Below, piece by piece: positions 12,916 to 59,240 of a stretch of DNA of 64,000 nt. Under the pieces are notes generated by a model. The model searched no databases and was not told the DNA's origin. It was given only the letters and a program-made list of their open reading frames with translations. Source of the DNA: Octopus sinensis (Eukaryota). The position numbers and the translations under genes are program-made. Each line of letters starts with the position of its first letter. The stretch's first letter is position 1. The stretch lies in contig NC_043013.1 of assembly GCF_006345805.1 (NCBI RefSeq), positions 41,044,001-41,108,000 of the forward strand. Reading direction: 5' to 3'.

Positions 12916-13830
12916 ATGGCACCAAAGTGGGAAAAGAAAGAGTTAAATCTTCTGCTGAGAGCATGGATGATTGCTAGTGGCAATCCACCGAACAACATCA
13001 TCACGGCTGCACTAAAAAACAATGGATTTCATAGAACCATTGACCAGATAGAGCGGAAGAAAAGTGAGTTTATCCGGTCTTACATGCTTATAAGACCACA
13101 CATCAAAACACTGGATAACATAATTGAAAATTATTGTGGCAAAGCTGATGAGGATGAAGAGGACGAAAAAGAGAAGGAAGCTGGAAGTCTGTGATCCAGG
13201 GGTTCCTCAGGAAAATGGATCACCTACCCCAGTGAACGACCAGGTAGTGAAGGATAGGGGAGCCAAGGAAGCAGAAACCGGAAGACCCCTGTACCAGTGG
13301 TCCTAGGAAGAATTGAAAAATTAGAAAAACAGAAGAAAAAAGGACCGAAAACAAAAATAAGGAGGAAAAAGGCAAAACAACCAAAGCTGAAACCCCAACC
13401 CACCACACAAACAGAGAACCCCATGGAGGATCCAATGCCACCCAGTACACTTCAGGAAAGAAGAAATCTGGAAGGCACCGAAGAACCTGTAAGTTCTACC
13501 TGCAGGGCAAATGTTGGCATGGTGAGGACGGCAAAAACTGCCGGTTCGCCCACCCGACACCCCGCCAGAACTTCAGGGGACTCAAAGAGAAAAACTTTAC
13601 CGAGGGAACACAAGAAATGTCTCCCAGGAAGTGCGCTCCTCAGATGTTCTGCACAACGCAGCAGCTGAGCAAGAGTCTTTTTTATGCATGGCGCAAAGAA
13701 TTGTCCAGCAACTAACCTGGCTACACCAAGCACAGAGAAGGAACCCTGCCCACCACTATGCAAGACCACCACAGTCAACAGACACGGGATGGCCTCCCCT
13801 AACGTCTGCACAGCCGTCACCCCAATACTT
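12916..13830 (+). pseudogene. Disrupted ORF1 region of a CR1/L2-group LINE: Myb/SANT-like N-terminus, acidic/basic linker, CCCH zinc finger
   Basis: ATG 12916 reads MAPKWEKKELNLLLRAW..IITAALKNNGFHRTIDQIERKKSEF..Y. From 13488 another frame reads CKFYLQGKCWHGEDGKNCRFAHP (C-x7-C-x8-C-x3-H). Frameshifts and stops lie between them. Confidence 0.65.
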
Positions 13831-15025
13831 TTACTAAATATTGGGGGCCTGTTGCATCAAAATAGAAACAAAATTTCTTTCCTGAGAGATCTTACTGCAT
13901 GCAATCAAGTCCTATGCATAGCACTTGTGGAAACTCACCTCAACCCTGATATAGAGGACGCAGAAGTACACATATCGAACTATGCCATACTGCAAACAGA
14001 CAGAAGGGAAAGGGGCCATGGTGGAGTTGCTGTATACATCCGAGATGACCTCACACCCCAGGTCTTAATGACATACTCAAATTCGGTATGTGACACTTTA
14101 ATTGTATACATAAGACATAATATAGTCATATGCAATACATATTGCCCACCGGATGCCCCAAATCACATAGGCAATCTTCAAACTTGCCTCACAAGAATTA
14201 AAAATCCTCATGAATCTGGAACACCACGTGACCATATTTCTTATGGGTGATTTCAACTTCCCAACGTCAAATGGCCCGAAGGTCACATACTCTCAGGAAT
14301 GAATCATTGCAAGCAAGAACACGTGGAGTCCCTGCTCAACCTCACCAATGCCTTATTCATGAAGCAAGTTGTACTCAAACCAACTAGGGCGAATAACATT
14401 CTGGATCTCTGCTTCATGAACAATATGGACATCATGATGTGAAAGTGACACCGACATCAGTTTCGGATCATAACATTATAGAGCTGTCTATATTAGGGCC
14501 AAAAGTAACCAGAGACATACAGCCTAAAGGAAGCACCCAAAATCTCTCCAATCTGAACTTCCACAAAGACTGGAAATTGATCCAAAAAGAGATGCTCAGA
14601 GAGGACTGGCCGGAATGTCTCTCCACACCAGACATTGACATGAAACTAGAATGTTTCATGTCTTCTGTGCAAGCCGTATGCCAGAAATATGTTCCAGAGC
14701 ACAAGGCCAAAACAAATAGGAGCAAGATTCCAAGAGACAGGAAGATCTTCATGAGAAAACGGACGAAAGTTGCAAATCGTCTCAACCAACATCCCAAAAG
14801 TAGTGAAACGTCCCGCCTAAAAACAACACTGATGGAGATCGAAAAAAGGCTGCAACAATCCTATGTGAAGGAAAAAGCAGACAAAGAAGCCTGTGTTATA
14901 AAAAACATTAAATCAAACCCAAAGGCATTCTTTCATTATGCGAAAGAAACAGTCTCAGTGCACTACAAGATAGGACTCCTCCTCCAAAAGGATGGCTCCC
15001 TCACAGACAGTCCAACTAAGATCAG
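13820..15025 (+). mobile_element. CR1/L2-group LINE ORF2 5' part (APE endonuclease and linker), truncated before the RT
   Basis: LLNIGGL, IALVETHLNPDIEDAEV, RGHGGVAVYIRDDL, GDFNFP (after a frameshift at about 14247), RANNILDLCF, SVSDHN, IKSNPKAFFHYAK. Homology stops abruptly at about 15025. Confidence 0.92.
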
Positions 15026-16539
15026 ACTCAATATTCTTAATTGTTCAATCAATTACTTACAATCAGTTGCTCCTGTCAACTCAACAGTTCTTTATTTTAT
15101 TGAAATGCTGTCCACTTATCACTTGGGGGTAGTCGGAATCCTTCCACAAGGATAATACAGAAGATATCAAAAAAATATCGCTAAGGCAAGATAGTAAATA
15201 GGAGTTGCTATTTGATATTTCAAAGAATCCAAAATGTACTGGAAATTGACAAACGCAAAACAAAACATGGCATAAAACATCAATCCTTTCACTAGTTTTA
15301 GCCATGACACTTGCAGCACTGCTGGAGCATCTCCAAGTAATTTTTTTTATGGAGATATAGACCCCAGTGCTGTCTGGTACTTATTTCATCATTCTCATAA
15401 GATACGAAATGTAAAGTGGACATTGCCATAAAGAAAATTGAGGTACGAATATCACAGGGAATATCTGTTCAGTTGTAGTCATTCTCTTGATATAAAAATA
15501 CCATATACAGTGAATGATGGATCACTGAAAGGGGAGACTATATGCCCAATCTGAAAAATTTGAAATTAAACCCTTATACTGGATTCCCCCATAACTGAAT
15601 ACCTACAAGGACAGACATACTCCTGGCTAATTCAGAAGCTGAATTACAATAGCCATTTTCCTAATGCTATTCTAATCTTGGCACAAAGCCAGCAGTTTGA
15701 GAGAGCATATTGATAATTCATGTCACCGGTACTTTATGAACCCCAAAGGATGAAGAGTAGAGCTAATCTAAATGGAATTAGAATTCAGTTGACTTTTTCC
15801 CCCCAGCTCTGAATGGTCTAATTATTGTCTGGTACTGTAATGACAGTTTGACACTTTAAATATGAAAGCAAGTTACTTTCTACGTTATCAAATTGAAATT
15901 ACAATGATGAAGATGCATATTAGCCATTGAAAAACAAAATAACTTCTGAAACATTCCTCATTGGTGTCAACATTAATTTAAAAGGGGTGATTTTTAGAAT
16001 ATTCATAGGTTACTCAAACTTCTCCAAAGGTATCTTCAACTTCATCAATTCAATGGATGAAACAAGAGATCGGGTTTCTTTCCAGGTACCCTCGAATCAC
16101 AGGGAATTAATGTCTATTTTAACAAAAATATGTTAAACAGCAAGTCTTCCTTCACTGAGTGAAAATATATCTGCCTATGTTATCAACCAGAAAATACTAT
16201 GTGGAAGATATATATATTAGCCATTCAAAAACACAGATTGTTAGCTACACTTAAACATTTGGTGTTGACATTAATTCCTAAAAGGCGATTTTAGGATATT
16301 CATTTCTTAATCTAAATTTCTCAAAAGCAATCTTCAACTTTATCAGTTTGATGGATCAAACTAGGTCCCTTTACAGGTACCCTTGAAACAGACAGTTGGC
16401 TTAAGACAGGCTTTGCTGGAACCGGTATCAAATATTGATTGCATTACTAATCAATTAGCATATAAATTGAAGGTACCAGTAAACTTAAAAGTTATAAAGC
16501 CAAAAGAAACATTTTGTAATGAAGCTGAAGCACACAAAA

Positions 16540-16880
16540 TGAAACCATTTAGCACAGATTGACCTTGAATTCTGCTGTGCATGCACGCTAAGTTTTAACA
16601 TTCTAGCTCACTTCCACCGTTTACAGCAGTGCTTGGAAGGAAGGTGTGTAGCAAGAGATCATTGTACTAACCATGACAGAGAAAGTTGTCATGGCAATAC
16701 CTGCTCAGGGGTAATCCATGGGTTATCAGAGGATGTGCAGATTAGCTACAGTTCAGTTCATTATCACTGAAGATTTGGGCACAAGACCTGCATCTGCCAA
16801 GTTTGTACCAAAACTTTCAGCTGAACAAGACTCCAGTTTCAGTTGCACAAGATCTTGTGTTGAGATTGATGAAAACTTTG
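16540..16880 (+). mobile_element. Mariner remnant (5' UTR, ATG, internally deleted transposase)
   Basis: accATGacagagaaag at about 16671, then ISYSSVQFIITEDLGTRPASAKFVPKLSAEQ (mariner RRVSAKFVPKLL-type motif). Confidence 0.8.
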
Positions 16881-17130
16881 AAAGCTTTGCGTAGGCTTCT
16901 GAGCAGGTATCACCAAGCTTTTGACAAAATTTGATGCATATTCTCTGCTCAATTTTCTGTCATGGTTAATGCAATGATCATACACTACACACGTTCCTCC
17001 CAAGCACTGCTGTAAATAGAAGTGAGCTAGAACATTAAAGCAGTGCATATGCACAGCAGAGTTCAAGGTTCACTGCATGCTTTAACTTTGTTACTATGGC
17101 AATAGTCTGGATACTTATTGATCAGAACAT
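16870..17130 (-). mobile_element. Mariner 5' end (TIR, 5' UTR, transposase start)
   Basis: Reverse complement has TIR-like gttctgatcaataagtatccagact. ATG at 16963-16961 reads MTE(K)IEQRICIKFCQKLGDTCSEAYAKL with one 1-bp loss. Confidence 0.85.
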
Positions 17131-17359
17131 GTAAAATAAAATTCATTATCTAGATGACTCATTTATGCACAACTAAGGAAACTAAATAAGGGTATATCAG
17201 ATCTACAGAGATATATAACTAATTTAGCGAAAGGACTAATTGAAAGGGCCTTGGTTTATGTATATTCCATTTCAAAAGCAAGAGTTTCTTTGCATGGATG
17301 TCCAATCCAGAAAATATTAGCTTTCTCCAGCCTCTGATAAATTTTGATTTTCTCACAAG

Positions 17360-17585
17360 GCCAGCACTTTTGAGGTATCGCCAAGCTTTTAGCAAAATTT
17401 GATGCATATTCTCTGCTCAATGCAATGATCATACACTACACAAGTTCCTTCCAAGCACTGCTGTAAACAGCAGAAGTGTGCTAGAATGTTAAAACAGTGC
17501 ACATGCATGGCAGAGTTCAAGGTTCACTGCATGCTTTAACTTCATTACTATGGCAATAGTCTGGATATTTATTGATCAGACCATA
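17360..17585 (-). mobile_element. Mariner 5' end, second minus-strand copy
   Basis: Colinear with 16895-17130 (aaaatttgatgcatattctctgctcaat ... ctatggcaatagtctggata.ttattgatcaga). Confidence 0.85.
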
Positions 17586-18749
17586 TAAAATAAAATTCAT
17601 TATCCAGTTCCAGCAAAGCTTGTTTTAAGTCAGCTGTCCGTTTCAAGGGAAACTGTAAAGAGACCTTAGATCTAGTTTGATCCATCAAACTGAAGTTGAA
17701 GGGGAGGGGAAGCTAATTTCATCAACCCTAGTGGTCAACTAGTATTTATTGACCACAAAAGCAAAGTATAGCAAAAATAATTACTTTGTCAGTTCGTAAC
17801 TTAAAAAAAAATGTCAAATGTGCACAACAGACTGATGAGTGGTCCCACACTAATAAATGCATTTACCCCATAATACAATGAAAGTACCACAGTACTTCAC
17901 AAATTTAAGAGTTTCAATCTGCATGTGAATATTCATAGCCAAAGTCACCTTAATTCCAAAAGGTGACTTCTGGCTATTCATTGGTTAATCAAAATTCCTC
18001 AAAAGTAATCTTCGACTTCACCAGTTTGACAGATCAAACAAGAGCTCAGATTTCTTTGTATGCACCCTTGAACCAGACACCCGATTTAATATGCTAGTGG
18101 TGTCAGAACTAGCATATTAATATTGATTACATTGTTAATCAAGTAGTGTCAATTGTTAAAAGGTACCAATAGGCTTAAAAATTATAAAGCAAATATTAAA
18201 GATAAAATAATACAATTTTCATATTTTACATCTCAAACTGCCCATTCCTATTTCCTCCACTCATTTTGAAATTACAAAAATCGAGTAACTGGGATATTAG
18301 ATAATATTCCACCAAGTAGCAAGTGGGCTTCACTTTTTTGTAGAAATATAAAACCAAACCAGATTAGTTCATGCATAACCAACCCCTAATATTGAATTCA
18401 CTTATCACTTGTTAACCAGCATGGAATTTTTCAATTATATTTCAGAGATACATTCGAGTTTAAACTGATGAAGTGAAGCCAGTACCATTAACAAACATTG
18501 GTTTGTTAAAATAGGCCTTAATGTCTTGTGGTACAACAACTGCTGTTTTACAATGTTCAATAAAAAGTAAGCAAGAAGACAGTATATAAAATAAATCCAC
18601 TATCCAGATGACATGTTTGAGCACAACCAAGGAGGAATCAAACTTAAGCAAAGCTATATATGATCAATAGAGATACAGGCATGACTAATTTAGATAAATT
18701 TATTAAACAGTAAGATATTGCTTTACGTATTTATTTTTTTATTTTTAAA

Positions 18750-20352
18750 ATTTTTATCTAGTTTCAGCTCACAAGCTGTGGCCATGCCGGGGCACCGCCA
18801 TTTGGTGTTGCTACATGATTTTACTTCACGAAATGCTTTTTAGCAATTGCCATTTGGTGCATGAGAGAGTTCGATGCAGCTGCCCTCATCTGCACCTCCT
18901 GCCGTGAAGTTGGTTCATCTGGGTCACCTGACAAGAAGAGATCCAGTTTTATTTTAAAGACATCTGCATCCACCCCATGCAGGTCTCTTAGGTTCTTCGG
19001 GAGGATATTGAAGAGCTGTGGGCCTCGGAAGCCCAGGCTATCACAGTATCTCGTCCTACATCTTGATGGCAAATTTGGAGTCCTTGGCACTATGCAGTGG
19101 TGCCCAGTTCTGGCATTTGTGTAACTCTCGATGCCAAAGTTTGGGAGAAGTCCTTCTAGGATCTTCCAGATGTATATTATGGCATATCTTTCTCACTTAC
19201 GCTCTAAGGAATAGAGTCTCAATCTCTTGAGTCTTTCCCAATAGCTTATATGCTGCACAGAGGCTATCTTCTTCGTGTAGCTTCGTTGGATTGCCTCAAG
19301 TTCTGTGATTAACTTGACACTGGATGGTGACCGTAGCTGAGAGCAATAGTCAAAGTGGCTTAGGACAAGTGTCCTCCAGAGGACCATCATGGCTTCCTGG
19401 TCTCTTGTTCTAAAGGTTCTAAGAATCCATCCGGTCAGCCACCTACATTTCATTGCCAATTTAGCAACATGCACATGAAAGGTTGCATCATCACTCATGT
19501 AAATACCCAGGTCTCGCACTGATTGTGCCTCTGGGATTGCAATCCCTCCAAGTCCAGTGTATTTATTGGGTATTGCATTTAGTTTTGCATGCTGATAGCA
19601 TAAAGCTTGAAACTTTTCAGCATTGAACTGCATGCTATTCTTTTCAGCCCACATATATTTTGTCCAGCTCACATTGCAGGTGCTTAGTGTCTTCAGGGTT
19701 CTGTATTGCCTGTGAAACTTTTGCATCATCTGCATAACTTGTGATCGTGGCTGTGTGGCTGAGGGCATGTCTGAGAGGGCCATTATGAACAGTAGTGGTC
19801 CCAAGACAGTGCCTTGTGGAACACCGCTCACTATTTGCATGTTACTGGAAGTGGCCCCATTGGCTACTACCACCTGACTTCTATCCTTCAGAAAGTCATG
19901 AAGCCATTCTCCCAATTTTCTAACTATGCCAAGATCATGCAGTTTGTGACATATCATTCCATGATCGACTTTATCAAAGGCCTTTGCAAAGTCAAGATAT
20001 ATGACTTCCACATTTGAGTGGTTGAGCAGTCGTTTCAGCACCCAGTCAGTGTTGTAGGAGCTGAGTTAAGCAGCTTCTTCCTGGTCGGAAACCATGTTGG
20101 GTGTCAGGCAGTAAGTCATTTTCTTCAAGGAAGGTGATTAGTTTCCTTCTGACTATTCCTTCCATGACCTTGCTGATGTGTGAGGTCAGAGAGATAGGTC
20201 TGTAGTTCTTGGCCTCCGCTCTGCTACCTCCTTTATGAATAGGGCATATTTTACCTTCCTTCAGTTTTCTTGGAAGTTTGCCAGTTGCAAGGAAGCTCTG
20301 AAAGAGGAATTGCAGTGGTCCTGCTAGGACTCTTACATACTTTCAAAAGCAG
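18750..20352 (-). mobile_element. CR1/L2-group LINE ORF2 3' part (RT domain to 3' end)
   Basis: KNYRPISLTSHISKVME, QHGFRPGRSCLTQL, YLDFAKAFDKVDH, SGVPQGTVLGPLLF, RDLGIYMS, SHFDYCSQL, FRGPQLFNILP. 3' tail ggtgccccggcatggccacagc..gctgaaactaga followed by an A-rich run. Confidence 0.95.
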
Positions 20353-24170: not shown

Positions 24171-26269
24171 GTGCGTGCGTGCGAAATCATACAAATTTGT
24201 ACATCACAATCTAAACCTTAAATTGTGTGAGAAATAACCAATACTGAGAACTCCATGTACATTTCTGTTCATGTACTTTAATCTGAGTTTTAGTATTAGT
24301 TTATATAAAAAAACAAAACCGATTGTATATAAGATATTTAGCAATATCATCTTACTTTATCATAGTTGGTGATATAATTAGTATAACTAGATCACCTCAT
24401 GTTAAAATGTTGGAAAATATGGTGCAACAAAAATTCGCAAGATGATGCAACTAAATCTTGAGAGCGTGGCTTAAGAGCGGAAAAGAAAGTAAACACAAGG
24501 TAAGAGATGAGCCTAGTTATTAGAAAGAGTTATTTCCTCGGTATTAAGTAATGTACATTAGCAACCATACAGATGGTGTTAAGAAAATGGCCCAGGGGGA
24601 AAAAGCAAAGCAAGGATTTAGATTTCCATTTAGTAAATACAAAAAAAAAAGGATTTAGATTTCCATTTAGTAAATACAAAAAAAAAAAATACAAAAAAAA
24701 AAAAAACAATGGCAGTGAACTAAGAAGCAGGTGATCAAAGGAAATAATATAGTAAACAAGACAGAGGCATTAATTTTGTCAATTATTGCAGTTAAAATGT
24801 ACAAAAATGCTTTTAAGAATATGCTACCCTCACCATACAGAACTGTTGCTAATAATTAAAATGGTTTATATCTAGAAACATTAAGTGCAATATTAAGGCA
24901 ATTGATGGTATACTGATCATCTTTTGCGTAATGGTATTATTATAAACCCAAGTAAATCCAGTAAATGCCTTTTTGGGGATTTCTTCATATTTCCTAGGAC
25001 ATATGATAAAGTATTCATCCTATCAATAAAGCCAAATCTATCTTAGTTTCTTCAATGTCAAGAAGAGGAAAATTTGTGATTTCCTATCATTGATTTATTC
25101 CCCAATATGTGGAACTCCAACTACCTCATGAATATCTTATGCATCATTCATACATACATACATACATATAAGAATCATCTTATTACTCTCAATGGTGTAG
25201 AGTGTGCTGCCTTAAAAGAAATTGTCTTAACTGACTACTGTGTTGCTTCATACCAATTCTGATGCTGAACCATGAGTATTTTGTTCAAACATTTGTACCA
25301 CCTTTCTGCTATTAACATTTCAGAAAAGTGTGGCCAGTCCTATACCCGTGGGATGACGTCAGCAGCTGGGGAGCTGACCAGAACTTGGGGCTGACTTGTA
25401 GAGGAAGGAATGATACATGCAGGCAGGGGAGCATTGGTCCTTTTTGATCAGGGTAGCCAACAGAGCTGGTCGTGTGAGCGCTTTGTCAAGGTAAGGGAAA
25501 AGCAGCAGCTATTTTTAGCGTTCAGGTCGGGCCACATAGAAGGGTGCATTACTGCCAGAGAGGTCTGTGTCGACAAAGAGAAGGTAGGCGTCTTTACTTC
25601 AAATCTCCCACATAAACCACAATACCATCCCCTTTACCACTGAAAACAAGCCATCTGTGTGGGTAGTCTAACATTTATAATACAGGCTGCTGAACCCTCA
25701 TGAAATAGATAAAAAAGACTGGACCCTCATGAAACTGACAAGAAGAATCCTTATATAACACACCAAAACTTCAAATGTACAAAATACACATACACCAAGT
25801 AGCAGTGCTGAAACAAATACACAGAAACTTGCGTACATTCACATGTTGGAGTGTTTGAACATGTATGAGTACATTGCTGTCTAAGTGGTAAAAAGCTTGT
25901 TAATTGATGCATCTGATGCAGAGTTTGGTGGCATCCTTCAGCAATGTGCTGATGTGGCAACTTCTCTTTTCTAAGAATCTATCACAAGCTGAAATGAATT
26001 GTTTTTGCAGCATAGCAGTGTTGACCATTTCTTGTACATGTTAGAAGGTTCTATTTTTCTCCATTTATTCACATCATAAACCTTACACATATGCTTTGAA
26101 TTCCTAATCTATCAACCAATCCCAGGAAAGTTTGGTAACTTGGCTTCATATCCTAATAGACAATGGATATTCACCTCTTAAATGTTCTGCTGATCCTGCT
26201 ATTGATACACTGTCCATGTAAATGCACTGCACAGTTTCCATCAATCTGCAGGAATTCACTGCCAATCAA

Positions 26270-30800: not shown

Positions 30801-31117
30801 ACATTAACAAAATGAACACAATCATAGTGGAGCCTCAAATTCCCCGGCTACCAAACTGAAGAAAAATAGAGCATAGTGCTTTACAATGCACGAAATGGCA
30901 AATTGTTTAAAAAGGTGAACAGCTGGACGAAACGAATAAAAGTCACAGCAGGCTGTAAAAAGGCGCCCCCACACTGTGTTATAGTGGACAAAATACACAG
31001 TGGGACCGAAAGAATATGGAAGCAATGTGTTGCACTGGCAGAAAAGAATTGACACCAGGTGTCTGCCAACGATGGTGAGTCAAAGACCTTATGAATGATT
31101 ATGATATAGACAATTTT

Positions 31118-34100
31118 TACTTTAGCTGAATACTTTAGCTTTGTTGTCTTTTAAAAAGGACAACATTTATTCTAATATATTCCGGACATCGAAGACATGA
31201 TCATACTACACTCCTTCCTTCCAAGCACTGTTGTAAACAGAAGTGAGCTAGAATGTGAGAACAGAGTTTTAGGGAATCTGTACCACGAGATTTACTCTGC
31301 ATGCTTTAGTTTTGTTGTCTTTTAAAAAGTACAACATTTATTCTAATATATTTTCAGACAACGAGGACGTTACAACGATCATACTACACTCCTTCCTTCC
31401 AAGCACTGTTGTAAACAGAAGTGAGCTAGAATATTAGAACAGAGTTTAAAGGGAATCTGTACCAAGGAGATTTACTCTGCATGCTTTAGTTTTGTTGTCT
31501 TTTAAAAAGGACAACATTTATTCTAATATATTTTCAGACATCGAGGACATTACAACGATCATACAACACTCCTTCCTTCCAAGCACTGTTGTAAACAGAA
31601 GTGAGCTAGAATGTGGGAACAGAGTTTATAGGGAATCTGCACCAAGCAGCTTTACTCTGCATGCTTTAGTTTTGTTGTCTTTCAAAAAGGACAACATTTA
31701 TTCTAATATATTTTCAGACATCGAGGGCATTATAATGATCACACAACACTCCTTCCTTCCAAGCACTGTTGTAAACAGAAGTGAGCTAGAATGTGGGAAC
31801 AGAGTTTATAGGGAATCTGTGCCAAGCAGCTTTACTCTGCATCCTTTAGTTTTGTTGTCTTTTAAAAAGGACAACATTTATTCTAATATATTTTCAGACA
31901 TCGAGGACATTATAATGATCACACAACACTCCTTCCTTCCAAGCACTGTTGTAAACAGAAGTGAGCTAGAATATTAGAACAGAGTTTATAGGGAATCTGT
32001 GCCAAGCAGCTTTACTCTGCATGCTTTAGTTTTGTTGTCTTTTAAAAAGGACAACATTTATTCTAATATATTTTCAGACAACGAGGACATTACAACGATC
32101 ATACTACACTCCTTCCTTCCAAGCACTATTGTAAACAGAAGTGAGCTAGAATGTGAGAACAGAGTTTATAGGGAATCTGTACCAAGCAGATTTACTCTGC
32201 ATGCTTTAGTTTTGTTGTCTTTTAAAAAGGACAACATTTATTCTAATATATTTTCAGACATCGAGGATATTATAATGATCACACAACACTCCTTCCTTCC
32301 AAGCACTGTTGTAAACAGAAGTGAGCTAGAATGTGGGAACAGAGTTTATAGGGAATCTGTGCCAAGCAGCTTTACTCTGCATGCTTTAGTTTTGTTGTCT
32401 TAAAAAGGACAACATTTATTCTAATATATTTTCAGACATCGAGGGCATTATAATGATCACACACCACTCCTTCCTTCCTAGCACTGTTGTAAATAGAAGT
32501 GAGCTAGAATGTTAGAACAGAGTTTATAGGGAATCTGTACCAAGCAGTTTACTCTGCATGCTTTAGCTTTGTTGTCTTTTAAAAAGGACAACATTTATTC
32601 TAATATATTTTCAGACATCGAGGACATTACAACGATCATACTACACTCCTTCCTTCCAAACACTGTTGTAAACAGAAGTAAGCTAGAATATTAGAACAGA
32701 GTTTAAAGGGAATCTGTACCAAGCAGCTTTACTCTGCATGCTTTAGTTTTGTTGTATTTTAAAAAGGACAACATTTATTCTAATATATTTTCAGACATCG
32801 AGGACATTACAACGATCATACTACACTCCTTCCTTCCAAACACTGTTGTAAACAGAAGTAAGCTAGAATATTAGAACAGAGTTTAAAGGGAATCTGTACC
32901 AAGCAGCTTTACTCTGCATGCTTTAGTTTTTTTGTCTTTCAAAAAGGACAACATTTATTCTAATATATTTTCAGACATCGAGGACATTACAACGATCATA
33001 CTACACTCCTTCCTTCCAAGCACTGTTGTAAACAGAAGTGAGCTAGAATATTAGAACAGAGTTTAAAGGGAATCTGTACCAAGCAGCTTTACTCTGCATG
33101 CTTTAGTTTTGTTGTCTTTTAAAAAGGACAACATTTATTCTAATATATTTTCAGACATCGAGGACATTATAATGATCACACAACACTCCTTCCTTCCAAG
33201 CACTGTTGTAAACAGAAGTGAGCTAGAATGTGGGAACAGTTTATAGGGAATCTGTGCCAAGCAGCTTTACTCTGCATGCTTTAGTTTTGTTGTCTTTTAA
33301 AAAGGACAACATTTATTCTAATATATTTTCAGACATCGAGGGCATTATAATGATCACACACCACTCCTTCCTTCCAAGCACTGTTGTAAATAGAAGTGAG
33401 CTAGAATGTTAGAACAGAGTTTATAGGGAATCTGTACCAAGCAGCTTTACTCTGCATGCTTTAGTTTTGTTGTCTTTTACAAAGGACAACATTTATAATG
33501 ATATATTTTCAGACATCGAGGGCATTATAATGATCACACACCACTCCTTCCTTCCAAGCACTGTTGTAAATAGAAGTGAGCTAGAATGTTAGAACAGAGT
33601 TTATAGGGAATCTGTACCAAGCAGCTTTACTCTGCATGCTTTAGTTTTGTTGTCTTTTAAAAAGGACAACATTTATTCTAATATATTTTCAGACATCGAG
33701 GGCATTATAATGATCACACAACTCTCCTTCCTTCCAAGCACTGTTGTAAACAGAAGTGAGCTAGAATGTTAGAACAGAGTTTATAGGGAACCTGTACCAA
33801 GCAGCTTTACTCTGCATGCTTTAGTTTTGTTGTCTTTTAAAAAGGACAACATTTATAATAATATATTTTCAGACATCGAGGGCATTATAATGATCACACG
33901 CCACTCCTTCCTTCCAAGCACTGTTGTAAATAGAAGTGAGCTAGAATGTTAGAACAGAGTTTATAGGGAATCTGTACCAAGCAGCTTTACTCTGCATGCT
34001 TTAGTTTTGTTGTCTTTTAAAAAGGACAACATTTATTCTAATATATTTTCAGACATCGAGGGCATTATAATGATCACACAACTCTCCTTCCTTCCAAGCA

Positions 34101-37100
34101 CTGTTGTAAACAGAAGTGAGCTAGAATGTTAGAACAGAGTTTAGAGGGAATCTGTACCAAGCAGCTTTACTCTGCATGCTTTAGCTTTGTTGTCTTTTAA
34201 AAACGACAACATTTATAATAATATATTTTCAGACATCGAGGGCATTATAATGATCACACAACACTCCTTCCTTCCAAGCACTGTTGTAAATAGAAGTGAG
34301 CTAGAATGTTAGAACAGAGTTTATAGGGAATCTGTGCCAAGCAGCTTTACTCTGCATCTTTAGTTTTGTTGTCTTTTAAAAAGGACAACATTTATTCTAA
34401 TATATTTTCAGACATCGAGGGCATTATAATGATCACACAACACTCCTTCCTTCCAAGCACTGTTGTAAACAGAAGTGAGCTAGAATGTGGGAACAGAGTT
34501 TATAGGGAATCTGTGCCAAGCAGCTTTACTCTGCATGCTTTAGTTTTGTTGTCTTAAAAAGGACAACATTTATTCTAATATATTTTCAGACATCGAGGGC
34601 ATTATAATGATCACACACCACTCCTTCCTTCCAAGCACTGTTGTAAATAGAAGTGAGCTAGAATGTTAGAACAGAGTTTATAGGGAATCTGTACCAAGCA
34701 GCTTTACTCTGCATGCTTTAGTTTTGTTGTCTTTTACAAAGGACAACATTTATAATGATATATTTTCAGACATCGAGGGCATTATAATGATCACACACCA
34801 CTCCTTCCTTCCAAGCACTGTTGTAAATAGAAGTGAGCTAGAATGTTAGAACAGAGTTTATAGGGAATCTGTACCAAGCAGCTTTACTCTGCATGCTTTA
34901 GCTTTGTTGTCTTTTAAAAACGACAACATTTATAATAATATATTTTCAGACATCGAGGGCATTATAATGATCACACAACACTCCTTCCTTCCAAGCACTG
35001 TTGTAAATAGAAGTGAGCTAGAATGTTAGAACAGAGTTTATAGGGAATCTGTGCCAAGCAGCTTTACTCTGCATCCTTTAGTTTTGTTGTCTTTTAAAAA
35101 GGACAACATTTATTCTAATATATTTTCAGACATCGAGGGCATTATAATGATCACACAACACTCCTTCCTTCCAAGCACTGTTGTAAACAGAAGTGAGCTA
35201 GAATGTGGGAACAGAGTTTATAGGGAATCTGTGCCAAGCAGCTTTACTCTGCATGCTTTAGTTTTGTTGTCTTAAAAAGGACAACATTTATTCTAATATA
35301 TTTTCAGACATCGAGGGCATTATAATGATCACACACCACTCCTTCCTTCCAAGCACTGTTGTAAATAGAAGTGAGCTAGAGTATTAGAACAGAGTTTATA
35401 GGGAATCTGTACCAAGCAGCTTTACTCTGCATGCTTTAGCTTTGTTGTCTTTTAAAAAGGACAACATTCTAATATATTTTCAGACATCGAGGACATTACA
35501 ACGATCATACTACACTCCTTCCTTCCAAACACTGTTGTAAACAGAAGTAAGCTAGAATATTAGAACAGAGTTTAAAGGGAATCTGTACCAAGCAGCTTTA
35601 CTCTGCATGCTTTAGTTTTGTTGTATTTTAAAAAGGACAACATTTATTCTAATATATTTTCAGACATCGAGGACATTACAACGATCATACTACACTCCTT
35701 CCTTCCAAGCACTGTTGTAAACAGAAGTGAGCTAGAATATTAGAACAGAGTTTAAAGGGAATCTGTACCAAGGAGATTTACTCTGCATGCTTTAGTTTTG
35801 TTGTCTTTTAAAAAGGACAACATTTATAATAATATATTTTCAGACATCGAGGGCATTATAATGATCACACACCACTCCTTCCTTCCAAGCACTGTTGTAA
35901 ATAGAAGTGAGCTAGAATGTTAGAACAGAGTTTATAGGGAATCTGTACCAAGCAGCTTTACTCTGCATGCTTTAGTTTTGTTGTCTTTTAAAAAGGACAA
36001 CATTTATAATAATATATTTTCAGACATCGAGGGCATTATAATGATCACACAACACTCCTTCCTTCCAAGCACTGTTGTAAACAGAAGTGAGCTAGAATGT
36101 TAGAACAGAGTTTATAGGGAATCTGTACCAAGCCGCTTTACTCTGCATGCTTTAGCTTTGTTGTCTTTTAAAAAGGACAACATTTATAATAATATATTTT
36201 CAGACATCGAGGACATTATAATGATCACACACCACTCCTTCCTTCCAAGCACTGTTGTAAACAGAAGTGAGCTAGAATGTTAGAACAGAGTTTATAGGGA
36301 ATCTGTACCAAGCAGCTTTACTCTGCATGCTTTAGTTTTGTTGTCTTTTACAAAGGACAACATTTATAATAATATATTTTCAGACATCGAGGGCATTATA
36401 ATGATCACACAACACTCCTTCCTTCCAAGCACTGTTGTAAATAGAAGTGAGCTAGAATGTTAGAATAGAGTTTATAGGGAATCTGTACCAAGCAGCTTTA
36501 CTCTGCATGCTTTAGTTTTGTTGTCTTTTAAAAAGGACAACATTTATTCTAATATATTTTCAGACATCGAGGACATTACAACGATCATACTACACTCCTT
36601 CCTTCTAAGCACTGTTGTAAACAGAAGTGAGCTAGAATATTAGAACAGAGTTTAAAGAGAATCTGTACCAAGCAGCTTTACTCTGCATGCTTTAGTTTTG
36701 TTGTCTTTTACAAAGGACAACATTTATAATAATATATTTTCAGACATCGAGGGCATTATAATGATCACACAACACTCCTTCCTTCCAAGCACTGTTGTAA
36801 ACAGAAGTGAGCTAGAATGTGGGAACAGAGTTTATAGGGAATCTGCACCAAGCAGCTTTACTCTGCATGCTTTAGTTTTGTTGTCTTTCAAAAAGGACAA
36901 CATTTATTCTAATATATTTTCAGACATCGAGGGCATTATAATGATCACACAACACTCCTTCCTTCCAAGCACTGTCGTAAACAGAAGTGAGCTAGAATGT
37001 GGGAACAGAGTTTATAGGGAATCTGTGCCAAGCAGCTTTACTCTGCATCCTTTAGTTTTGTTGTCTTTTAAAAAGGACAACATTTATTCTAATATATTTT

Positions 37101-38040
37101 CAGACATTATAATGATCACACAACACTCCTTCCTTCCAAGCACTGTTGTAAACAGAAGTGAGCTAGAATGTTAGAACAGAGTTTAAAGGGAATCTGTACC
37201 AAGCAGCTTTACTCTGCATGCTTTAGTTTTGTTGTCTTTTAAAAAGGACAACATTTATTCTAATATATTTTCAGACATCGAGGGCATTATAATGATCACA
37301 CACCACTCCTTCCTTCCAAGCACTGTTGTAAACAGAATTGAGCTAGAATGTTAGAACAGAGTTTATAGGGAATCTGTGCCAAGCAGCTTTTCACTGCATG
37401 CTTTAGCTTTGTTGTCTTTTAAAAAGGATAACATTTATTCCAATATATTTTCAGACATCGAGTGCATTAGAACGATCATACTACACTCCTTGCTTTCAAG
37501 CACTGTTGCAAACAGAAGTGAGCTAGAATGTTTAAACTGATTTTATGGGGAATCTGTGCCAAGCAGCTTTACTCTGCATGCTTTAGTTTTGTTGTCTTTT
37601 AAAAAGGACAACATTTATTCTAATATATTTTCAAACATCGAGGGCATTATAATGATCACACAACACTCCTTCCTTCCTAGCACTGTTGTAAATAGAAGTG
37701 AGCCAGAATGTGAGAACAGAGTTTATAGGGAATCTGTGCCAAGCAGCTTTACTCTGCATGCTTTAGTTTTGTTGTCTTTTAAAAAGGACAACATTTATTC
37801 TAATATATTTTCAGACATCGAGGACATTACAACGATCATACTACACCCCTTCCTTCCAAGCACTGTTGCAAACAGAAGTGAGCTAGAATGTTAAAACTGA
37901 TTTTATGTGGAATCTGTGCCAAGCAGCCTTTCACTGCATGCTTTAGCTTTGTTGTCTTTTGAAAAGGACAACAGTTATTCTAATATATTTTCAGACATCG
38001 AGAGCATTACAACGATCACACTTCACTCCTTCCTTCCTTT
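31118..38040. repeat. 180-bp tandem satellite, about 38 monomers
   Basis: Monomer: gctttagttttgttgtcttttaaaaaggacaacatttattctaatatattttcagacatcgagggcattataatgatcacacaacactccttccttccaagcactgttgtaaacagaagtgagctagaatgttagaacagagtttatagggaatctgtaccaagcagctttactctgcat. Recurs at 31303, 31483, 31663, 31843 and onward. Edge monomers are more diverged. Confidence 0.98.
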
Positions 38041-38229
38041 CAAGCTTGATAAGCTTGGAATTAGTTACCTTATTCAAATATATTTTCCAAAACCATAGTC
38101 AATACAACGATCACACTACACACTTTCCTTTCAAGCTTGATAAACTTGGAATTAGTTCTGTCGAGATTGCGGCTCTTGATTCGAATATGCGGCAAACCAA
38201 AGGTCAAAGAAAAAGTAAAAATTTGACCA

Positions 38230-43869: not shown

Positions 43870-44530
43870 CAAGTGGCAAATGATGCTGTGCGTTGAAAGC
43901 AGCCAGGCATGCGGGCAAGACGATGCTGTGCGTTGAAAGCAGCCAGGCATGCGGGCAAGACGATGCTGTGCGTTGAAAGCAGCCAGGCATGCGGGCAAGA
44001 CGATGCTGTGCGTTGAAAGCAGCCAGGCATGCGGGCAAGACGATGCTGTGCGTTGAAAGCAGCCAGGCATGCGGGCAAGACGATGCTGTGCGTTGAAAGC
44101 AGCCAGGCATGCGGGCAAGACGATGCTGTGCGTTGAAAGCAGCCAGGCATGCGGGCAAGACGATGCTGTGCGTTGAAAGCAGCCAGGCATGCAGGCAACA
44201 GGATGCTGTGCGTTGAAAGCAGCCAGACATGTGGGCAGCAAAAAATTGACAACTTCAGTCTGCTCAAACCAACCACAACATGTTTTCTTGGTCAAGAACA
44301 CCCCACTTGTTTGACAGGGTCCCTTCTCTCCCAGCTTGACAATTGTGCGACTTGCCTCTTCTCCAAGCTGAAAGCCATACTGAATGGTGGAAACGATTGG
44401 TCATGAGAAGAAACTCAGAAAAGCAACAGCAGCACTCCATGTCATTCCAGACACATTACCAGCAGTATCACTACTTGTGGAAGAAGTGTAAACTCCAAAG
44501 GGAGTATTTCGAAGGTAATTAGAATTTACG
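43870..44530 (+). mobile_element. Mariner transposase C-terminal remnant
   Basis: DAVR*KQPDMWAAKN*QL (cf. DAVRRKRPEMWAAKNWQL), PFSPSL (YSPDL-like), LFSKLKAILNG, WKKC..SKGEYFEG. Confidence 0.75.
43882..44238. repeat. 40-bp minisatellite, about 9 copies
   Basis: gatgctgtgcgttgaaagcagccaggcatgcgggcaagac at 43882, 43922 and onward to 44202. Internal copies are identical. Confidence 0.98.
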
Positions 44531-52702: not shown

Positions 52703-52741
<39 letters not shown>

Positions 52742-53385
52742 TGTCCATTCTCATATACACACCTTATCTTTGTGTGAATACACATACCTTGTCCATTCCC
52801 ATATTTATATCCCCTTATCTATATACACACACACACACACACACACCTTATCTATCCCTATATATACCTTATCTGTGTGTGTATGTGTATATATATATAC
52901 ACCTTATCTATCCCTATATATACCTTATCTGTGTGTGTATGTGTATATATATATACACCTTATCTATCCCTATATATACCTTATCTGTGTGTGTATGTGT
53001 ATATATATATACACCTTATCTATCCCTATATATACCTTATCTGTGTGTGTATGTGTATATATATATACACCTTATCTATCCCTATATATACCTTCTGTGT
53101 GTGTATGTGTATATATATATACACCTTATCTATTCCTATATATACCTTATCTGTGTGTGTGTATGTATATACACACCTCCCTATATATACCTTATATATA
53201 TATATATATATACATATACCTTATATATATATATATATACATATACCTTATATATATATATATACATATACATACCTTATATATATATATATACATATAC
53301 CTTATATATATATATATACATATACATACCTTATATATATATATATATACATATACCTTATATATATATATATATACATATACCT

Positions 53386-53423
<38 letters not shown>

Positions 53424-53432
53424 CATATACCT

Positions 53433-53480
<48 letters not shown>

Positions 53481-53610
53481 TATACAGACCTTATCTATCC
53501 CTATATATATATATATATATATATATAGCTTATCTATCCCTATATATAAATATGTAGGAATGTATATATATGTTTACATGCATGTATTTATGTATACATG
53601 CATACATACA
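52700..53610. repeat. Compound microsatellite: (CA)n, ~55-bp composite units, then (TA)n-rich units
   Basis: Units accttatctatccctatatataccttatctgtgtgtgtatgtgtatatatatatac (about 5-6 copies, 52845-53170) grade into tacatataccttatatatatatata units. This explains the Y/I ORFs. Confidence 0.97.
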
Positions 53611-57379: not shown

Positions 57380-59240
57380 CCTTAGTGATCCTTACATGGA
57401 TTCTACTTAAATTCTCATGATCCACTTTGCCCAATAAAATGGAAAGCAGAGAAAGAACGACCTCAAAATCCCACACCTGATGACTTTTCTAAAAGGCAAA
57501 GGGAATTTCAATTGGGTTTTGATCAACTCGAGCCGAAATGATTTCGGATAACATTTCAGACGGTGACTAGAGCACGCAGATAAATTCGTGGCACCATTTA
57601 CGCTACAGTATTACATCTGGTCAGTGTAGACCTTTTGTGAGCACGGTGGTAAGAAACGACCGAGAGCTGAACTGCAAAAACAATTCGTAGAAGAAACCCT
57701 GTTCAGGCATCTCGGCCCTTAACTTCTAAGGGGCTAGGCCGCATTCAGGTCATGACTCCTGGGTGTCCTGTTGATACTTTTAGCCACTTGGTAATCGGAG
57801 ACTTGTGTATTTTAATTGCCTAGAGATTTCGTATAGTTATAACTTCTCTCCGTTGACTCAGCTGATGACAGATACTGCTGGAGTAAATATTAAAAAAAGA
57901 CATCGGAAGCAAGAATATTCCCGTTCTGCCTCTATGCCTCATTGTCCTGCTGCAGAATCGAAACTGGATCGCTAAACAGCAGTTTAGTCACGGCTGACAA
58001 AACATCGAACTATCATGCCATTCGACCTTTTTGAAACTAACGAGGCTTATAAATTTGCGGTGCTAATTTCAGAATGTTGAAGCTGTTACAGTGATGACTC
58101 CATTTTTATTCACCAGCCGTGGGCAGATACAGAATGTCGAACAGCTTCAATAACTCCATATTCCTGTTTCCATTCTCCAGTCGAGAAGATTTGCCGTCAT
58201 GAATTTAGCACATTTCTCCAGGTGTGACAGCGTAGATACGGAGCTATAAGTATCGACTATTTTGTCAGACTACAGAGTTTGTTTCCCCACTGCGTGTATA
58301 TAATTGGTTACACTCTCCGTTGAAAAACTAACACAGAACATACGATGTGCAGTGGTAAAGTTTGTTAGTTGTTCATTTATACACAGCCAACAGCCTCTGT
58401 AGATGAACAACCTTCCATACGACAGTTTTAAACCAAATAGAACATCCGTAGATAGTTATGTAATCAGTTGATATCGAAGTTGACTTGGCTCAGGGCTTGT
58501 GGGTTCCAGAACAGCTGTACACTTTAAACGGTGACTATGTAGACCACACATTAATGACATCACATTGAAGACATTCAAACCTAGTCTGATTTTTACAAAG
58601 AGTACTTAAATTCTTGTGGGATTTTGAAATCGTTCTCTCTCTAACTTCCATTTTATTAGGCGAAATCAAGCACATCTGATGACATAAAAGACAATTGGTT
58701 TTTGATCAACTCTAGTCAATTACGAAATGATTTCAGATGACATTTCAGACGGTAACAAGATCACGCAGATAAATTCGTTGCACCATTGGAGTTACATCAC
58801 AACTGATCCGTATAGACATGAGTACTGTAAGAAACTAAAAAGATGAACATCAAAATGTCTCCATAGACGAAACCTCACTCAGGCAAGTGCTTCGGCTCTA
58901 AGGGGCCAGGCCGCATTCAGGTCATGACTCCTGGATCACCTAAAAGGGCAGGCCACATTCAGGTCATGACTCCTGGATCACCTAAGGGGCCAAGCCACAT
59001 TCAGGTCTTGACTCCTGGATCACCTAAGGGGCCAGGCCACATTCAGGTCATGACTCCTGGATCACCTAAGGGGCCAGGCCACATTCAGGTCATGAATCCT
59101 GGATCACTTAAGGGGCCAGGCCACATTCAGGTCATGAGTCCTGGAGGTCCTGACACTTAACCACTTGGTTATCGGAGACTTGTGCATTTAGGCCGCCTGG
59201 AGATTATGTTGATGAAAACCCTTTCCATTGACTCAGCTTT
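57380..59240. repeat. Diverged direct duplication (57380-57865 vs 58590-59240)
   Basis: Shared blocks ttttgatcaactc, gaaatgatttc, acatttcagacggt, cacgcagataaattcgt, ggccgcattcaggtcatgactcctgg, ccacttggt.atcggagacttgtg, ttgactcagct. Confidence 0.85.
58899..59145. repeat. 42-bp minisatellite, about 6 copies
   Basis: taaggggccaggccacattcaggtcatgactcctggatcacc at 58899, 58941, 58983, 59025, 59067 and 59109. Confidence 0.97.

What the first reader, a model, noticed from the sequence alone, without database searches (positions are those of the whole stretch)
31118..38040. 180-bp satellite built from the left end of a mariner transposon
Seen: the monomer aligns with the mariner 5' ends at 16975-17130 and 17425-17585 (aatgatc..cac..ttccttccaagcactg(c/t)tgtaaa..agaagtg(a/t)gctagaatgtta(a/g)aacag, then ctgcatgcttta..tt..tt, then a weaker tatt..tcagac match to the TIR). 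Edge monomers (about 37388 and 37928) keep the ancestral ttcactgcatgcttta, while interior monomers have the derived ttactctgcatg. Established: satellites can arise from transposon fragments, and ~180 bp is near nucleosome repeat length. Inference: a satellite caught with its progenitor, with homogenised centre and ancestral edges. It may retain transposase-binding TIR remnants in tandem.
Basis: partly seen in the sequence, partly recalled or inferred. Interest (0 to 1): 0.75.

Follow-up and report, generated by a model that had tools for sequence, protein, structure and literature searches.

The report
Satellite built from mariner 5' UTR
A 6.9-kb array of about 39 copies of a 180-bp unit is real, and three quarters of each unit descends from the untranslated leader of a mariner transposon; this is a clear new example of a known way satellites arise, but it carries no transposon end repeats.

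Summary
The tandem array is confirmed: 31126-38037, period 180, 38.6 copies, 94% matches. A degenerate extra unit extends it to about 38160.

I built a profile only from mariner 5' leaders found in two unrelated public samples. In the window it hits exactly 41 places: three decayed mariner 5' fragments at 16.5-17.6 kb, and 38 satellite monomers (E 1e-12 to 1e-18).

133 of the 180 bp align collinearly with the mariner segment between the terminal inverted repeat (TIR) and the transposase ATG. The direction transposon-to-satellite is favoured for two reasons:
- The leader is single-copy and contiguous with the ORF in independent elements.
- The satellite has an 18-bp deletion that no mariner copy has.

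- The monomer contains no TIR. Its remaining 47 bp are unassigned.
- The nearby copies are not the progenitor. Two of them lack 21 bp that the satellite keeps.
- Edge monomers are more diverged from the array consensus but are not closer to mariner overall.

Transposon-derived satellites are well documented, so this is a new member of a known kind. Interest is moderate to low.

The parts
31112..38037 (-). Satellite array: 39 head-to-tail units of 180 bp (38 full or near-full, the last truncated). The mariner 5'->3' direction runs on the minus strand.
   Evidence: TRF. Monomer cutting and alignment. All 38 profile hits lie on the minus strand.
38038..38160 (-). Degenerate terminal units: a ~93-bp variant repeat (37975-38066 against 38070-38157). 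It keeps monomer positions ~42-108 at 74-79% identity, and the rest is replaced.
   Evidence: Sequence read; blastn of the right flank.
33520..33652 (-). Example of the mariner-derived part of one repeat period (133 bp). It corresponds to consensus positions 69-180 plus 1-21 of the next unit, and to mariner leader profile positions 43-198, from just inside the TIR to just before the ATG.
   Evidence: nhmmer five-copy profile against the satellite trimer: 78 bits, E 5e-26. The external-only profile hit at 33654-33530 has E 1.6e-16.
33473..33519 (.). Example of the unassigned 47 bp of a monomer (consensus positions 22-68, TCTTTTAAAAAGGACAACATTTATTCTAATATATTTTCAGACATCGA). Its 5' part, together with the mariner-derived TGTTGTC, forms a short dyad: TGTTGTC-N10-GACAACA.
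   Evidence: No significant match in the window or in 45 fetched loci. TIR-side alignment p 0.5-0.8; CDS-side alignment to copy B only, z 3.1, p 0.0015. Hairpin seen in the fold, though the whole monomer is not unusually structured.
16504..16890 (+). Mariner fragment A: 5'-truncated (no TIR), leader, ATG at 16674, decayed N-terminal coding sequence to about residue 130. It keeps the 21-bp segment that B and C lack.
   Evidence: profile hit 16515-16652, E 1e-27; tblastn 16625-16879.
16891..17131 (-). Mariner fragment B: 5' TIR (17104-17131, flanked by TA), leader, ATG about 16968, first ~30-55 codons. It lies head-to-head with A.
   Evidence: 17133-16984, E 3e-21; 16959-16789.
17335..17585 (-). 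Mariner fragment C: 5' TIR (17558-17585, flanked by TA), leader, first ~35 codons with the ATG region deleted. It shares 21 bp of flank beyond the TIR with B, so B and C are old segmental duplicates (84.5% identical).
   Evidence: (17586-17435, E 1e-20).

Best explanation
This is a satellite-type tandem array whose 180-bp unit was made from an internal piece of a mariner transposon. The piece is the 5' untranslated leader, from about 14 bp inside the 5' terminal inverted repeat up to the transposase start codon. An 18-bp deletion reduced it to 133 bp, and it is joined to 47 bp of unassigned sequence.

Shown: the array, the collinear homology, the absence of the TIR and of the ORF, the derived deletion, and recent block duplications inside the array.

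Inferred: one copy of the element suffered a local tandem duplication of this segment, by replication slippage or by faulty gap repair after excision. Unequal exchange then amplified and partly homogenised it to about 39 units, while the edges decayed.

Having no TIR, the array cannot be bound or moved by transposase in the usual way. It is most likely selectively neutral repetitive DNA. Any chromatin, centromere or small-RNA role is untested.
For: Array.

Mariner identity of the dispersed copies: a composite N-terminus hits 33 proteins carrying PF17906 (HTH_48) and PF01359; tblastn.

Family TIR defined from complete ~1.3-kb relatives: L005 has a perfect 31-nt inverted repeat at 4-34 / 1310-1340, L004 has 147-178 / 1462-1493. 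These are homologous to the termini of B, C and L002, all flanked by TA.

Independent test: a profile built only from the leaders of L001 (JGI soil metagenome) and L002 (Logan SRR8281669) finds A, B, C and 38 monomers and nothing else in 64 kb, with monomer E-values of 1e-12 to 1e-18. L002 alone gives the same 41 hits.

Extent: profile positions 43-198, which is 133 of 180 bp.

Polarity: all five mariner copies carry 18 bp (about GCAGTGCATATGCACAGC in copy B) that every monomer lacks. The monomers keep 21 bp (GAATCTGTRCCAAGCAGCTTTA) present in A, L001 and L002 but deleted in B and C.

Ongoing array dynamics: mean pairwise identity is 93%. Monomers 14 and 21 are 100% identical, as are 18 and 22. 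Blocks m13-14 / m20-21 and m18-19 / m22-23 are duplicated. There is no regular higher-order period.

Edges: m1, m36, m38 and m39 are the most diverged, and a degenerate unit lies beyond the array.
Against: No full-length mariner of this lineage from the same genome was available, so the species' own consensus could not be aligned.

The 47-bp remainder is unexplained. It could be diverged start-of-ORF sequence (collinear match to copy B only, p 0.0015, not reproduced with L001 or L002), a piece of the element's unknown 3' end, or flank.

Only one array in one 64-kb window was seen. Copy number in the genome, chromosomal position and presence in related species are unknown.

The tandemisation mechanism is inferred; no intermediate (a mariner copy with 2-3 leader repeats) was found.

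The satellite is not measurably closer to the window's own mariner relics than to L002.
Confidence: 0.88

Rival explanations
1. The reverse direction: a pre-existing satellite monomer was captured into the leader of this mariner lineage, which then carried it around.
For: Similarity alone does not give direction. Satellite capture by a Tc1/mariner MITE has been proposed for miDNA4 in Xenopus (reviewed in PMC12628747).
Against: The segment is single-copy, at the same place between TIR and ATG, in four independent elements from at least three sources: A, B/C, L001 from soil, and L002 from another run. All monomers share an 18-bp deletion relative to every mariner copy. The 47-bp remainder of the monomer is absent from all mariner copies.
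Confidence: 0.04
2. The array is not a free satellite but the expanded internal repeat core of a non-autonomous element, such as a tandem-repeat-bearing MITE of the DTC84 / miDNA4 type or a Helitron-like carrier. It would then be dispersed by transposition.
For: Such composite elements are common in molluscs and frogs (PMC3879986; PMC9659126). The best named relative of a LINE in the window is from a cephalopod.
Against: The flanks share no inverted or direct repeats (best match 12 bp, E 0.86), show no TA-flanked TIR, and are not repeated elsewhere in the window. The family TIR motif is absent near the array. Thirty-nine units is far more than the handful typical of MITE cores. Helitron termini were not specifically searched for.
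Confidence: 0.06
3. One reading: the monomer is the whole left end including TIR remnants, so the array presents tandem transposase-binding sites.
For: An eye-level resemblance: ATTTATT ... TCAGAC in the monomer against ATTTATTGATCAGACC in copy C.
Against: The collinear semi-global alignment of the 55-bp remainder to the TIR side of B, C and L002 scores no better than shuffles (p 0.78, 0.49, 0.67). Local alignment gives z <= 0. Profile hits to monomers start at position ~44, whereas hits to B and C start at 5. The 22-nt TIR core with up to 3 mismatches is found only at B and C.
Confidence: 0.05
4. Chance or low-complexity resemblance, with no common descent.
For: None beyond the modest identity (70-74% over the aligned part).
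Against: E 1e-12 to 1e-18 per monomer with a profile that contains no window sequence, and no other hit in 128 kb of searched strand.
Confidence: 0.01

Closest known systems
ENSAT1 satellite of Arabidopsis thaliana, derived from the 5' UTR of the En/Spm-like transposon Atenspm (listed in the table of PMC9659126)
   Same: A satellite whose monomer comes from the 5' untranslated region of an autonomous class II transposon.
   Different: A different superfamily (CACTA, not mariner) and a plant host. I did not compare sequences or array structure.
miDNA4, a Tc1/mariner MITE of Xenopus tropicalis carrying a satellite (PMC12628747, PMC9659126)
   Same: A Tc1/mariner-superfamily element linked to a tandem repeat that occurs as one to many copies.
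   Different: There the repeat sits inside a MITE bounded by TIRs, and the authors propose capture of a pre-existing repeat. Here no TIRs bound the array, and the repeat is the element's own leader.
Bari1 heterochromatic cluster of Drosophila melanogaster (Tc1-mariner; PMC9659126)
   Same: Tandem amplification of Tc1/mariner-superfamily DNA to tens of copies.
   Different: The Bari1 repeat unit is the whole transposon. Here it is a 180-bp internal piece lacking both TIR and ORF.
Xstir satellite from the TIR of the Xmix MITE in Xenopus laevis (PMC9659126 table)
   Same: A satellite derived from part of a class II element.
   Different: Xstir comes from the TIR. This monomer specifically excludes the TIR.
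Chenopodium major satellite derived from the tnp2 domain of a CACTA transposon (PMC7320549, abstract seen)
   Same: An internal transposon segment turned into a satellite via deletion derivatives.
   Different: That one has a coding-domain origin, in a plant CACTA element.
Mboumar mariner within the satellite DNA of Messor ants (PMC2581405)
   Same: Mariner and satellite DNA are physically associated.
   Different: There the mariner is inserted into an unrelated satellite. Here the satellite is made of mariner sequence.

Membership tests
Satellite DNA | Head-to-tail tandem monomers of uniform length | tested here: met
   Period 180, 38.6 copies, 94% matches. Spacing is mostly 180 bp, with some units at 171-178.
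Satellite DNA | Kilobase-scale array with intra-array homogenisation and decayed edges | tested here: met
   6.9 kb; mean pairwise identity 93%; identical monomer pairs; edge monomers at 88-90% to the consensus; a degenerate unit beyond the array.
Satellite DNA | High genomic abundance, multiple arrays, heterochromatic or centromeric location | not testable with these tools
   Only one 64-kb window is available. Pattern scans of metagenome, prokaryote-genome and viral collections found nothing.
mariner (Tc1/mariner superfamily), for copies A, B and C | Transposase with a Mos1-type N-terminal HTH (PF17906) | tested here: met
   The composite N-terminus hits 33 proteins, nearly all PF17906 and some PF01359. 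tblastn places the pieces at 16625-16879, 16789-16959 and 17335-17427.
mariner (Tc1/mariner superfamily), for copies A, B and C | Catalytic domain (PF01359) present | tested here: not met
   No match beyond about residue 190 anywhere in the window, so the copies are 5' fragments. Relative L001 has a PF01359 gene call.
mariner (Tc1/mariner superfamily), for copies A, B and C | About 28-31-bp terminal inverted repeats flanked by TA | tested here: inconclusive
   The 5' termini of B and C are homologous to the proven TIRs of complete relatives L004 and L005 and are preceded by TA. No 3' TIR is present in the window. A lacks the TIR.
Transposon-derived satellite | Monomer significantly and collinearly homologous to a defined segment of the element | tested here: met
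   78 bits, 133 of 180 bp, profile positions 43-198. The external-only profile hits 38 monomers at E 1e-12 to 1e-18.
Transposon-derived satellite | The segment is an intrinsic, single-copy part of independent element copies | tested here: met
   Present between TIR and ATG in B, C and L002, and directly upstream of the ATG in A and L001, which lack the TIR.
Transposon-derived satellite | Derived character state in the satellite, giving polarity | tested here: met
   An 18-bp deletion is shared by all monomers and absent from all five mariner copies.
MITE with internal tandem repeats (DTC84 / miDNA4 type) | Array bounded by TIRs and a target-site duplication | tested here: not met
   No inverted or direct repeat between the flanks. 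No family TIR near the array.
Tandem cluster of whole transposons (Bari1 type) | Repeat unit equals the complete element with TIRs and ORF | tested here: not met
   The unit is 180 bp and lacks profile positions 1-42 (TIR) and everything past the ATG.

The most novel reading that the evidence does not exclude
The array is a tandem stack of about 39 copies of the mariner promoter/leader region. It could be transcribed and processed into small RNAs that silence the cognate mariner family in trans, acting as a satellite-shaped 'trap' locus. Alternatively it could have been recruited as a centromeric or heterochromatin-nucleating repeat in this (possibly cephalopod or mollusc) genome. Nothing in the sequence excludes either idea, and nothing supports them.
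Probability: 0.08. Interest if true: 0.6.

Novelty: new member of a known kind. Interest (0 to 1): 0.35.

Why it matters
This is a clean, datable example of how a satellite is born from a DNA transposon. The breakpoints are mapped, from about 14 bp inside the TIR to the start codon. Polarity rests on indels and is checked against mariner relatives from other genomes.

Most documented transposon-to-satellite cases involve retrotransposon LTRs or UTRs, MITEs or Helitrons. I did not find a satellite made of an autonomous mariner's leader in the two reviews I consulted (PMC9659126, PMC12628747).

If genome-wide data showed this repeat to be abundant or centromeric, it would become more interesting.

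Tried and rejected
- **Satellite ORF search.** The 161-aa ORF that runs through the monomers (180 bp = 60 codons) had no homologues among 5.8 billion proteins. It is an accidental open frame.
- **Pattern scans.** Exact-pattern scans for the conserved core found nothing in metagenome contigs, prokaryotic genomes or viral contigs.
- **Source genome look-up.** Exact-product look-ups of two window ORFs found nothing on record.
- **Rfam.** No hit at gathering thresholds over the whole window.
- **TIR-remnant hypothesis.** Local and collinear semi-global alignments against shuffles were not significant.
- **Start-of-ORF origin for the 47-bp remainder.** Significant only against copy B (p 0.0015), not against L001 or L002, and not with the degenerate flank unit. 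I left it as a suggestion. The flank unit does carry TGACTATG, identical to L002's sequence at its ATG, so homology probably reaches the start codon.
- **47-bp remainder against other sequence.** Nothing found in the rest of the window or in 45 fetched loci.
- **Single-strand folding of the monomer.** Not unusual (z -0.19); there is only a short local dyad.
- **Closer mariner relatives L004 and L005** (67-70% protein identity to P0001). They share the TIR but not the leader, so the leader type is restricted to the P0001/P0002-like lineage.
- **Higher-order repeat.** None found.
- **Is the satellite closer to in-window or external mariner copies?** Not resolved.
- **Literature search for run SRR8281669.** Nothing found. 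One search was rejected for syntax.
Full report
**1. The observation**

Tandem Repeats Finder reports one dominant array at 31126-38037, with period 180, 38.6 copies, 94% matches and score 11864. I cut the array at the anchor CTGCATGCTTTAG. This gave 39 units spaced mostly 180 bp apart, with a few at 171-178, and a 180-nt consensus. GC content is about 36%, similar to the surrounding sequence.

Blastn of a consensus dimer against the rest of the window finds only three places:
- 16592-16666 on the minus strand
- 16973-17043 on the plus strand
- 17424-17497 on the plus strand

Each match is about 83% over 71-75 bp, E about 1e-15. For two right-edge units the match extends to about 125 bp. This includes the 16-mer TTCACTGCATGCTTTA, which occurs only at 17069, 17523, 37390 and 37930. 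The interior form TTACTCTGCATGCTTTA occurs 32 times.

**2. What the dispersed copies are**

Reading and translating 16.5-17.6 kb shows three decayed mariner 5' fragments.

| Copy | Coordinates | Strand | Content |
|---|---|---|---|
| A | 16504-16890 | + | No TIR; leader; ATG at 16674; broken N-terminal coding sequence to about residue 130 |
| B | 16891-17131 | - | Terminal repeat, leader, first codons; abuts A head-to-head |
| C | 17335-17585 | - | Terminal repeat, leader, first codons |

A composite of their N-terminal peptides hits 33 proteins, nearly all with Pfam PF17906 (Mos1 transposase HTH) and some with PF01359. The closest are P0001 and P0002, which share EQRICIKFCQKLGDTC. tblastn with all 33 proteins finds mariner coding remnants only at 16625-16879, 16789-16959 and 17335-17427. 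It finds no catalytic domain anywhere in the window.

B and C are 84.5% identical and share 21 bp beyond the element end. They are therefore old segmental duplicates rather than independent insertions.

**3. Evidence from elsewhere**

The contigs encoding P0001 (L001, JGI soil metagenome 3300003321) and P0002 (L002, Logan assembly of SRR8281669) carry the transposase ORF preceded by a leader. That leader is homologous to those of A, B and C. For L002 it is also directly homologous to the satellite: 70% over 132 bp, E 1e-13.

A protein-guided scan of metagenome contigs gave 41 more mariner loci. The two complete ~1.3-kb relatives, L004 and L005, define the family TIR:
- L005 has a perfect 31-nt inverted repeat at 4-34 / 1310-1340.
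- L004 has 147-178 / 1462-1493.

The motif ...TGATCAAAAAGTATCAAGAC aligns with the termini of B, C and L002, all preceded by TA. L004 and L005 share the TIR but not the leader.

**4. The decisive test**

I built a profile from the leaders of L001 and L002 only, with no window sequence in it. Searched against both strands of the window, it finds exactly 41 hits:
- A, E 1e-27
- B, E 3e-21
- C, E 1e-20
- 38 satellite units, E 1e-12 to 1e-18, all on the minus strand

B and C match from profile position 5-6 and so include the TIR. Every satellite unit matches only from about position 44 to 181-185. L002 alone as the query gives the same 41 hits.

A five-copy profile against a satellite trimer gives 78 bits over profile positions 43-198, which is 133 of the 180 bp. 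Three quarters of the unit is therefore mariner leader. It starts about 14 bp inside the TIR and ends at the start codon. In the degenerate flank unit the string TGACTATG is identical to L002's sequence at its ATG.

**5. Direction of descent and relationship to the neighbours**

The multiple alignments show two informative indels:
- All monomers lack 18 bp that all five mariner copies have. This is a derived state of the satellite.
- All monomers keep 21 bp (GAATCTGTRCCAAGCAGCTTTA) that A, L001 and L002 have and that B and C have lost.

The leader is single-copy and contiguous with the ORF in four independent elements. Together these facts favour transposon-to-satellite and argue against capture of a satellite by the transposon. 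They also mean B and C cannot be the source copy.

Identity of the satellite consensus to each reference:

| Reference | Identity |
|---|---|
| B | 73% |
| C | 74% |
| A | 70% |
| L002 | 74% |
| L001 | 64% |

Site-pattern counts do not place the satellite with the window copies rather than the external ones. 'Caught with its progenitor' is therefore not supported. What lies 14 kb away are relics of the same family.

**6. The rest of the monomer**

Consensus positions 22-68 (47 bp) are unassigned.
- They have no significant match elsewhere in the window or in the fetched loci.
- The TIR core with up to three mismatches occurs only at B and C.
- A collinear continuation into the first ~45 nt of the ORF scores z 3.1 (p 0.0015) against copy B, but not against L001 or L002, and not when the degenerate flank unit is used. 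I treat this as a suggestion only.

The junction between the mariner-derived and unassigned parts forms a short dyad, TGTTGTC-N10-GACAACA. The monomer as a whole is not unusually structured.

**7. Array anatomy**

- Mean pairwise identity is 93%.
- At least three monomer subtypes are interspersed, with no regular higher-order period.
- Blocks m13-14 / m20-21 and m18-19 / m22-23 are duplicated. Monomers 14 and 21 are 100% identical, as are 18 and 22, which indicates recent unequal exchange.
- The first unit and the last four are the most diverged.
- Beyond 38037 lies a ~93-bp degenerate variant unit, 38070-38157, at 74-79% to monomer positions ~42-108.
- Edge units are not closer to the mariner references than interior ones: 73-78 of 105 against 73-79 of 105.
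- For the edge 16-mer, polarity is ambiguous. B, C and perhaps L001 agree with the edge form, while L002 agrees with the interior form. The difference is a CT slippage in CACTCTG, which is prone to recurrence.
- The flanks share no inverted or direct repeats and are not repeated elsewhere in the window, so there is no sign of a MITE-like carrier.

**8. How it most likely works**

Shown: a non-coding tandem array made of transposon leader. It lacks the TIRs and the ORF, and it is still undergoing block duplication.

Inferred: the first duplication arose within one mariner copy, by slippage or by faulty repair of an excision gap. Amplification followed by unequal exchange.

Without TIRs it should not bind or respond to transposase. 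The most likely present state is neutral repetitive DNA. Roles in chromatin or small-RNA production are possible but untested.

**9. Comparison with known cases**

Reviews list many satellites derived from transposon parts:
- ENSAT1, from the Atenspm 5' UTR
- Xstir, from a MITE TIR
- miDNA4, a satellite-bearing Tc1/mariner MITE
- the Bari1 whole-element cluster
- the Chenopodium CACTA-derived satellite
- Mboumar, a mariner inserted into an unrelated ant satellite

The present case works like ENSAT1 (leader-derived) but in a mariner. It fails the defining features of a MITE core and of a whole-element cluster. I did not find a satellite derived from a mariner leader in the two reviews I consulted, so it is a new member of a known kind.

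**10. Host**

The source organism is unknown. A LINE reverse-transcriptase ORF at 19193-20041 (minus strand) has its best named relative in the cephalopod Argonauta hians, at 54% identity. This is a weak hint towards a mollusc-like invertebrate and nothing more.

Noticed in passing
window 16504-17153: Mariner fragments A (+) and B (-) lie head-to-head and form a ~650-bp quasi-palindrome of two 5' ends (leader plus N-terminal coding sequence, arms ~80% complementary). This could be a fold-back rearrangement or a nested insertion.
   Followed up: partly
window 15880-16099, 16175-16503, 17947-18193; inverted piece 17604-17701: An unclassified ~300-bp dispersed or tandem-ish repeat ('X'), with copies 70-74% identical, surrounds the mariner fragments. 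C appears to be inserted in an inverted X copy, and B carries 21 bp of the same flank.
   Followed up: partly
window 13684-15155 (+) and 19193-20041 (-): Fragments of non-LTR retrotransposon ORFs. The RT ORF hits PF00078 (E 5e-12). Its best named relative is a hypothetical protein of the cephalopod Argonauta hians (54% identity), and its best overall hit is an ENA metagenome contig at 67%.
   Followed up: partly
window 43875-44237: A 40-bp minisatellite, 9.1 copies, 97% matches (GGCAAGACGATGCTGTGCGTTGAAAGCAGCCAGGCATGCG). It is open in three minus-strand frames, probably by accident of periodicity.
   Followed up: no
window 58898-59145: A 42-bp tandem repeat, 5.9 copies, 93% matches.
   Followed up: no
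window 52708-53603: A compound low-complexity block: (AC)n, a 56/112-bp repeat (5.9 / 3.5 copies), a 27-bp repeat and a long impure (TA)n.
   Followed up: no
window 24612-24687: A perfect 37-bp tandem duplication ending in a poly-A run. It may be the tail of a retroposed element.
   Followed up: no
L001 725-1195: The soil-metagenome mariner contig contains an internal inverted duplication of part of its catalytic region: a PF01359 gene is called on the opposite strand and overlaps the HTH gene. This relative is therefore itself rearranged.
   Followed up: no
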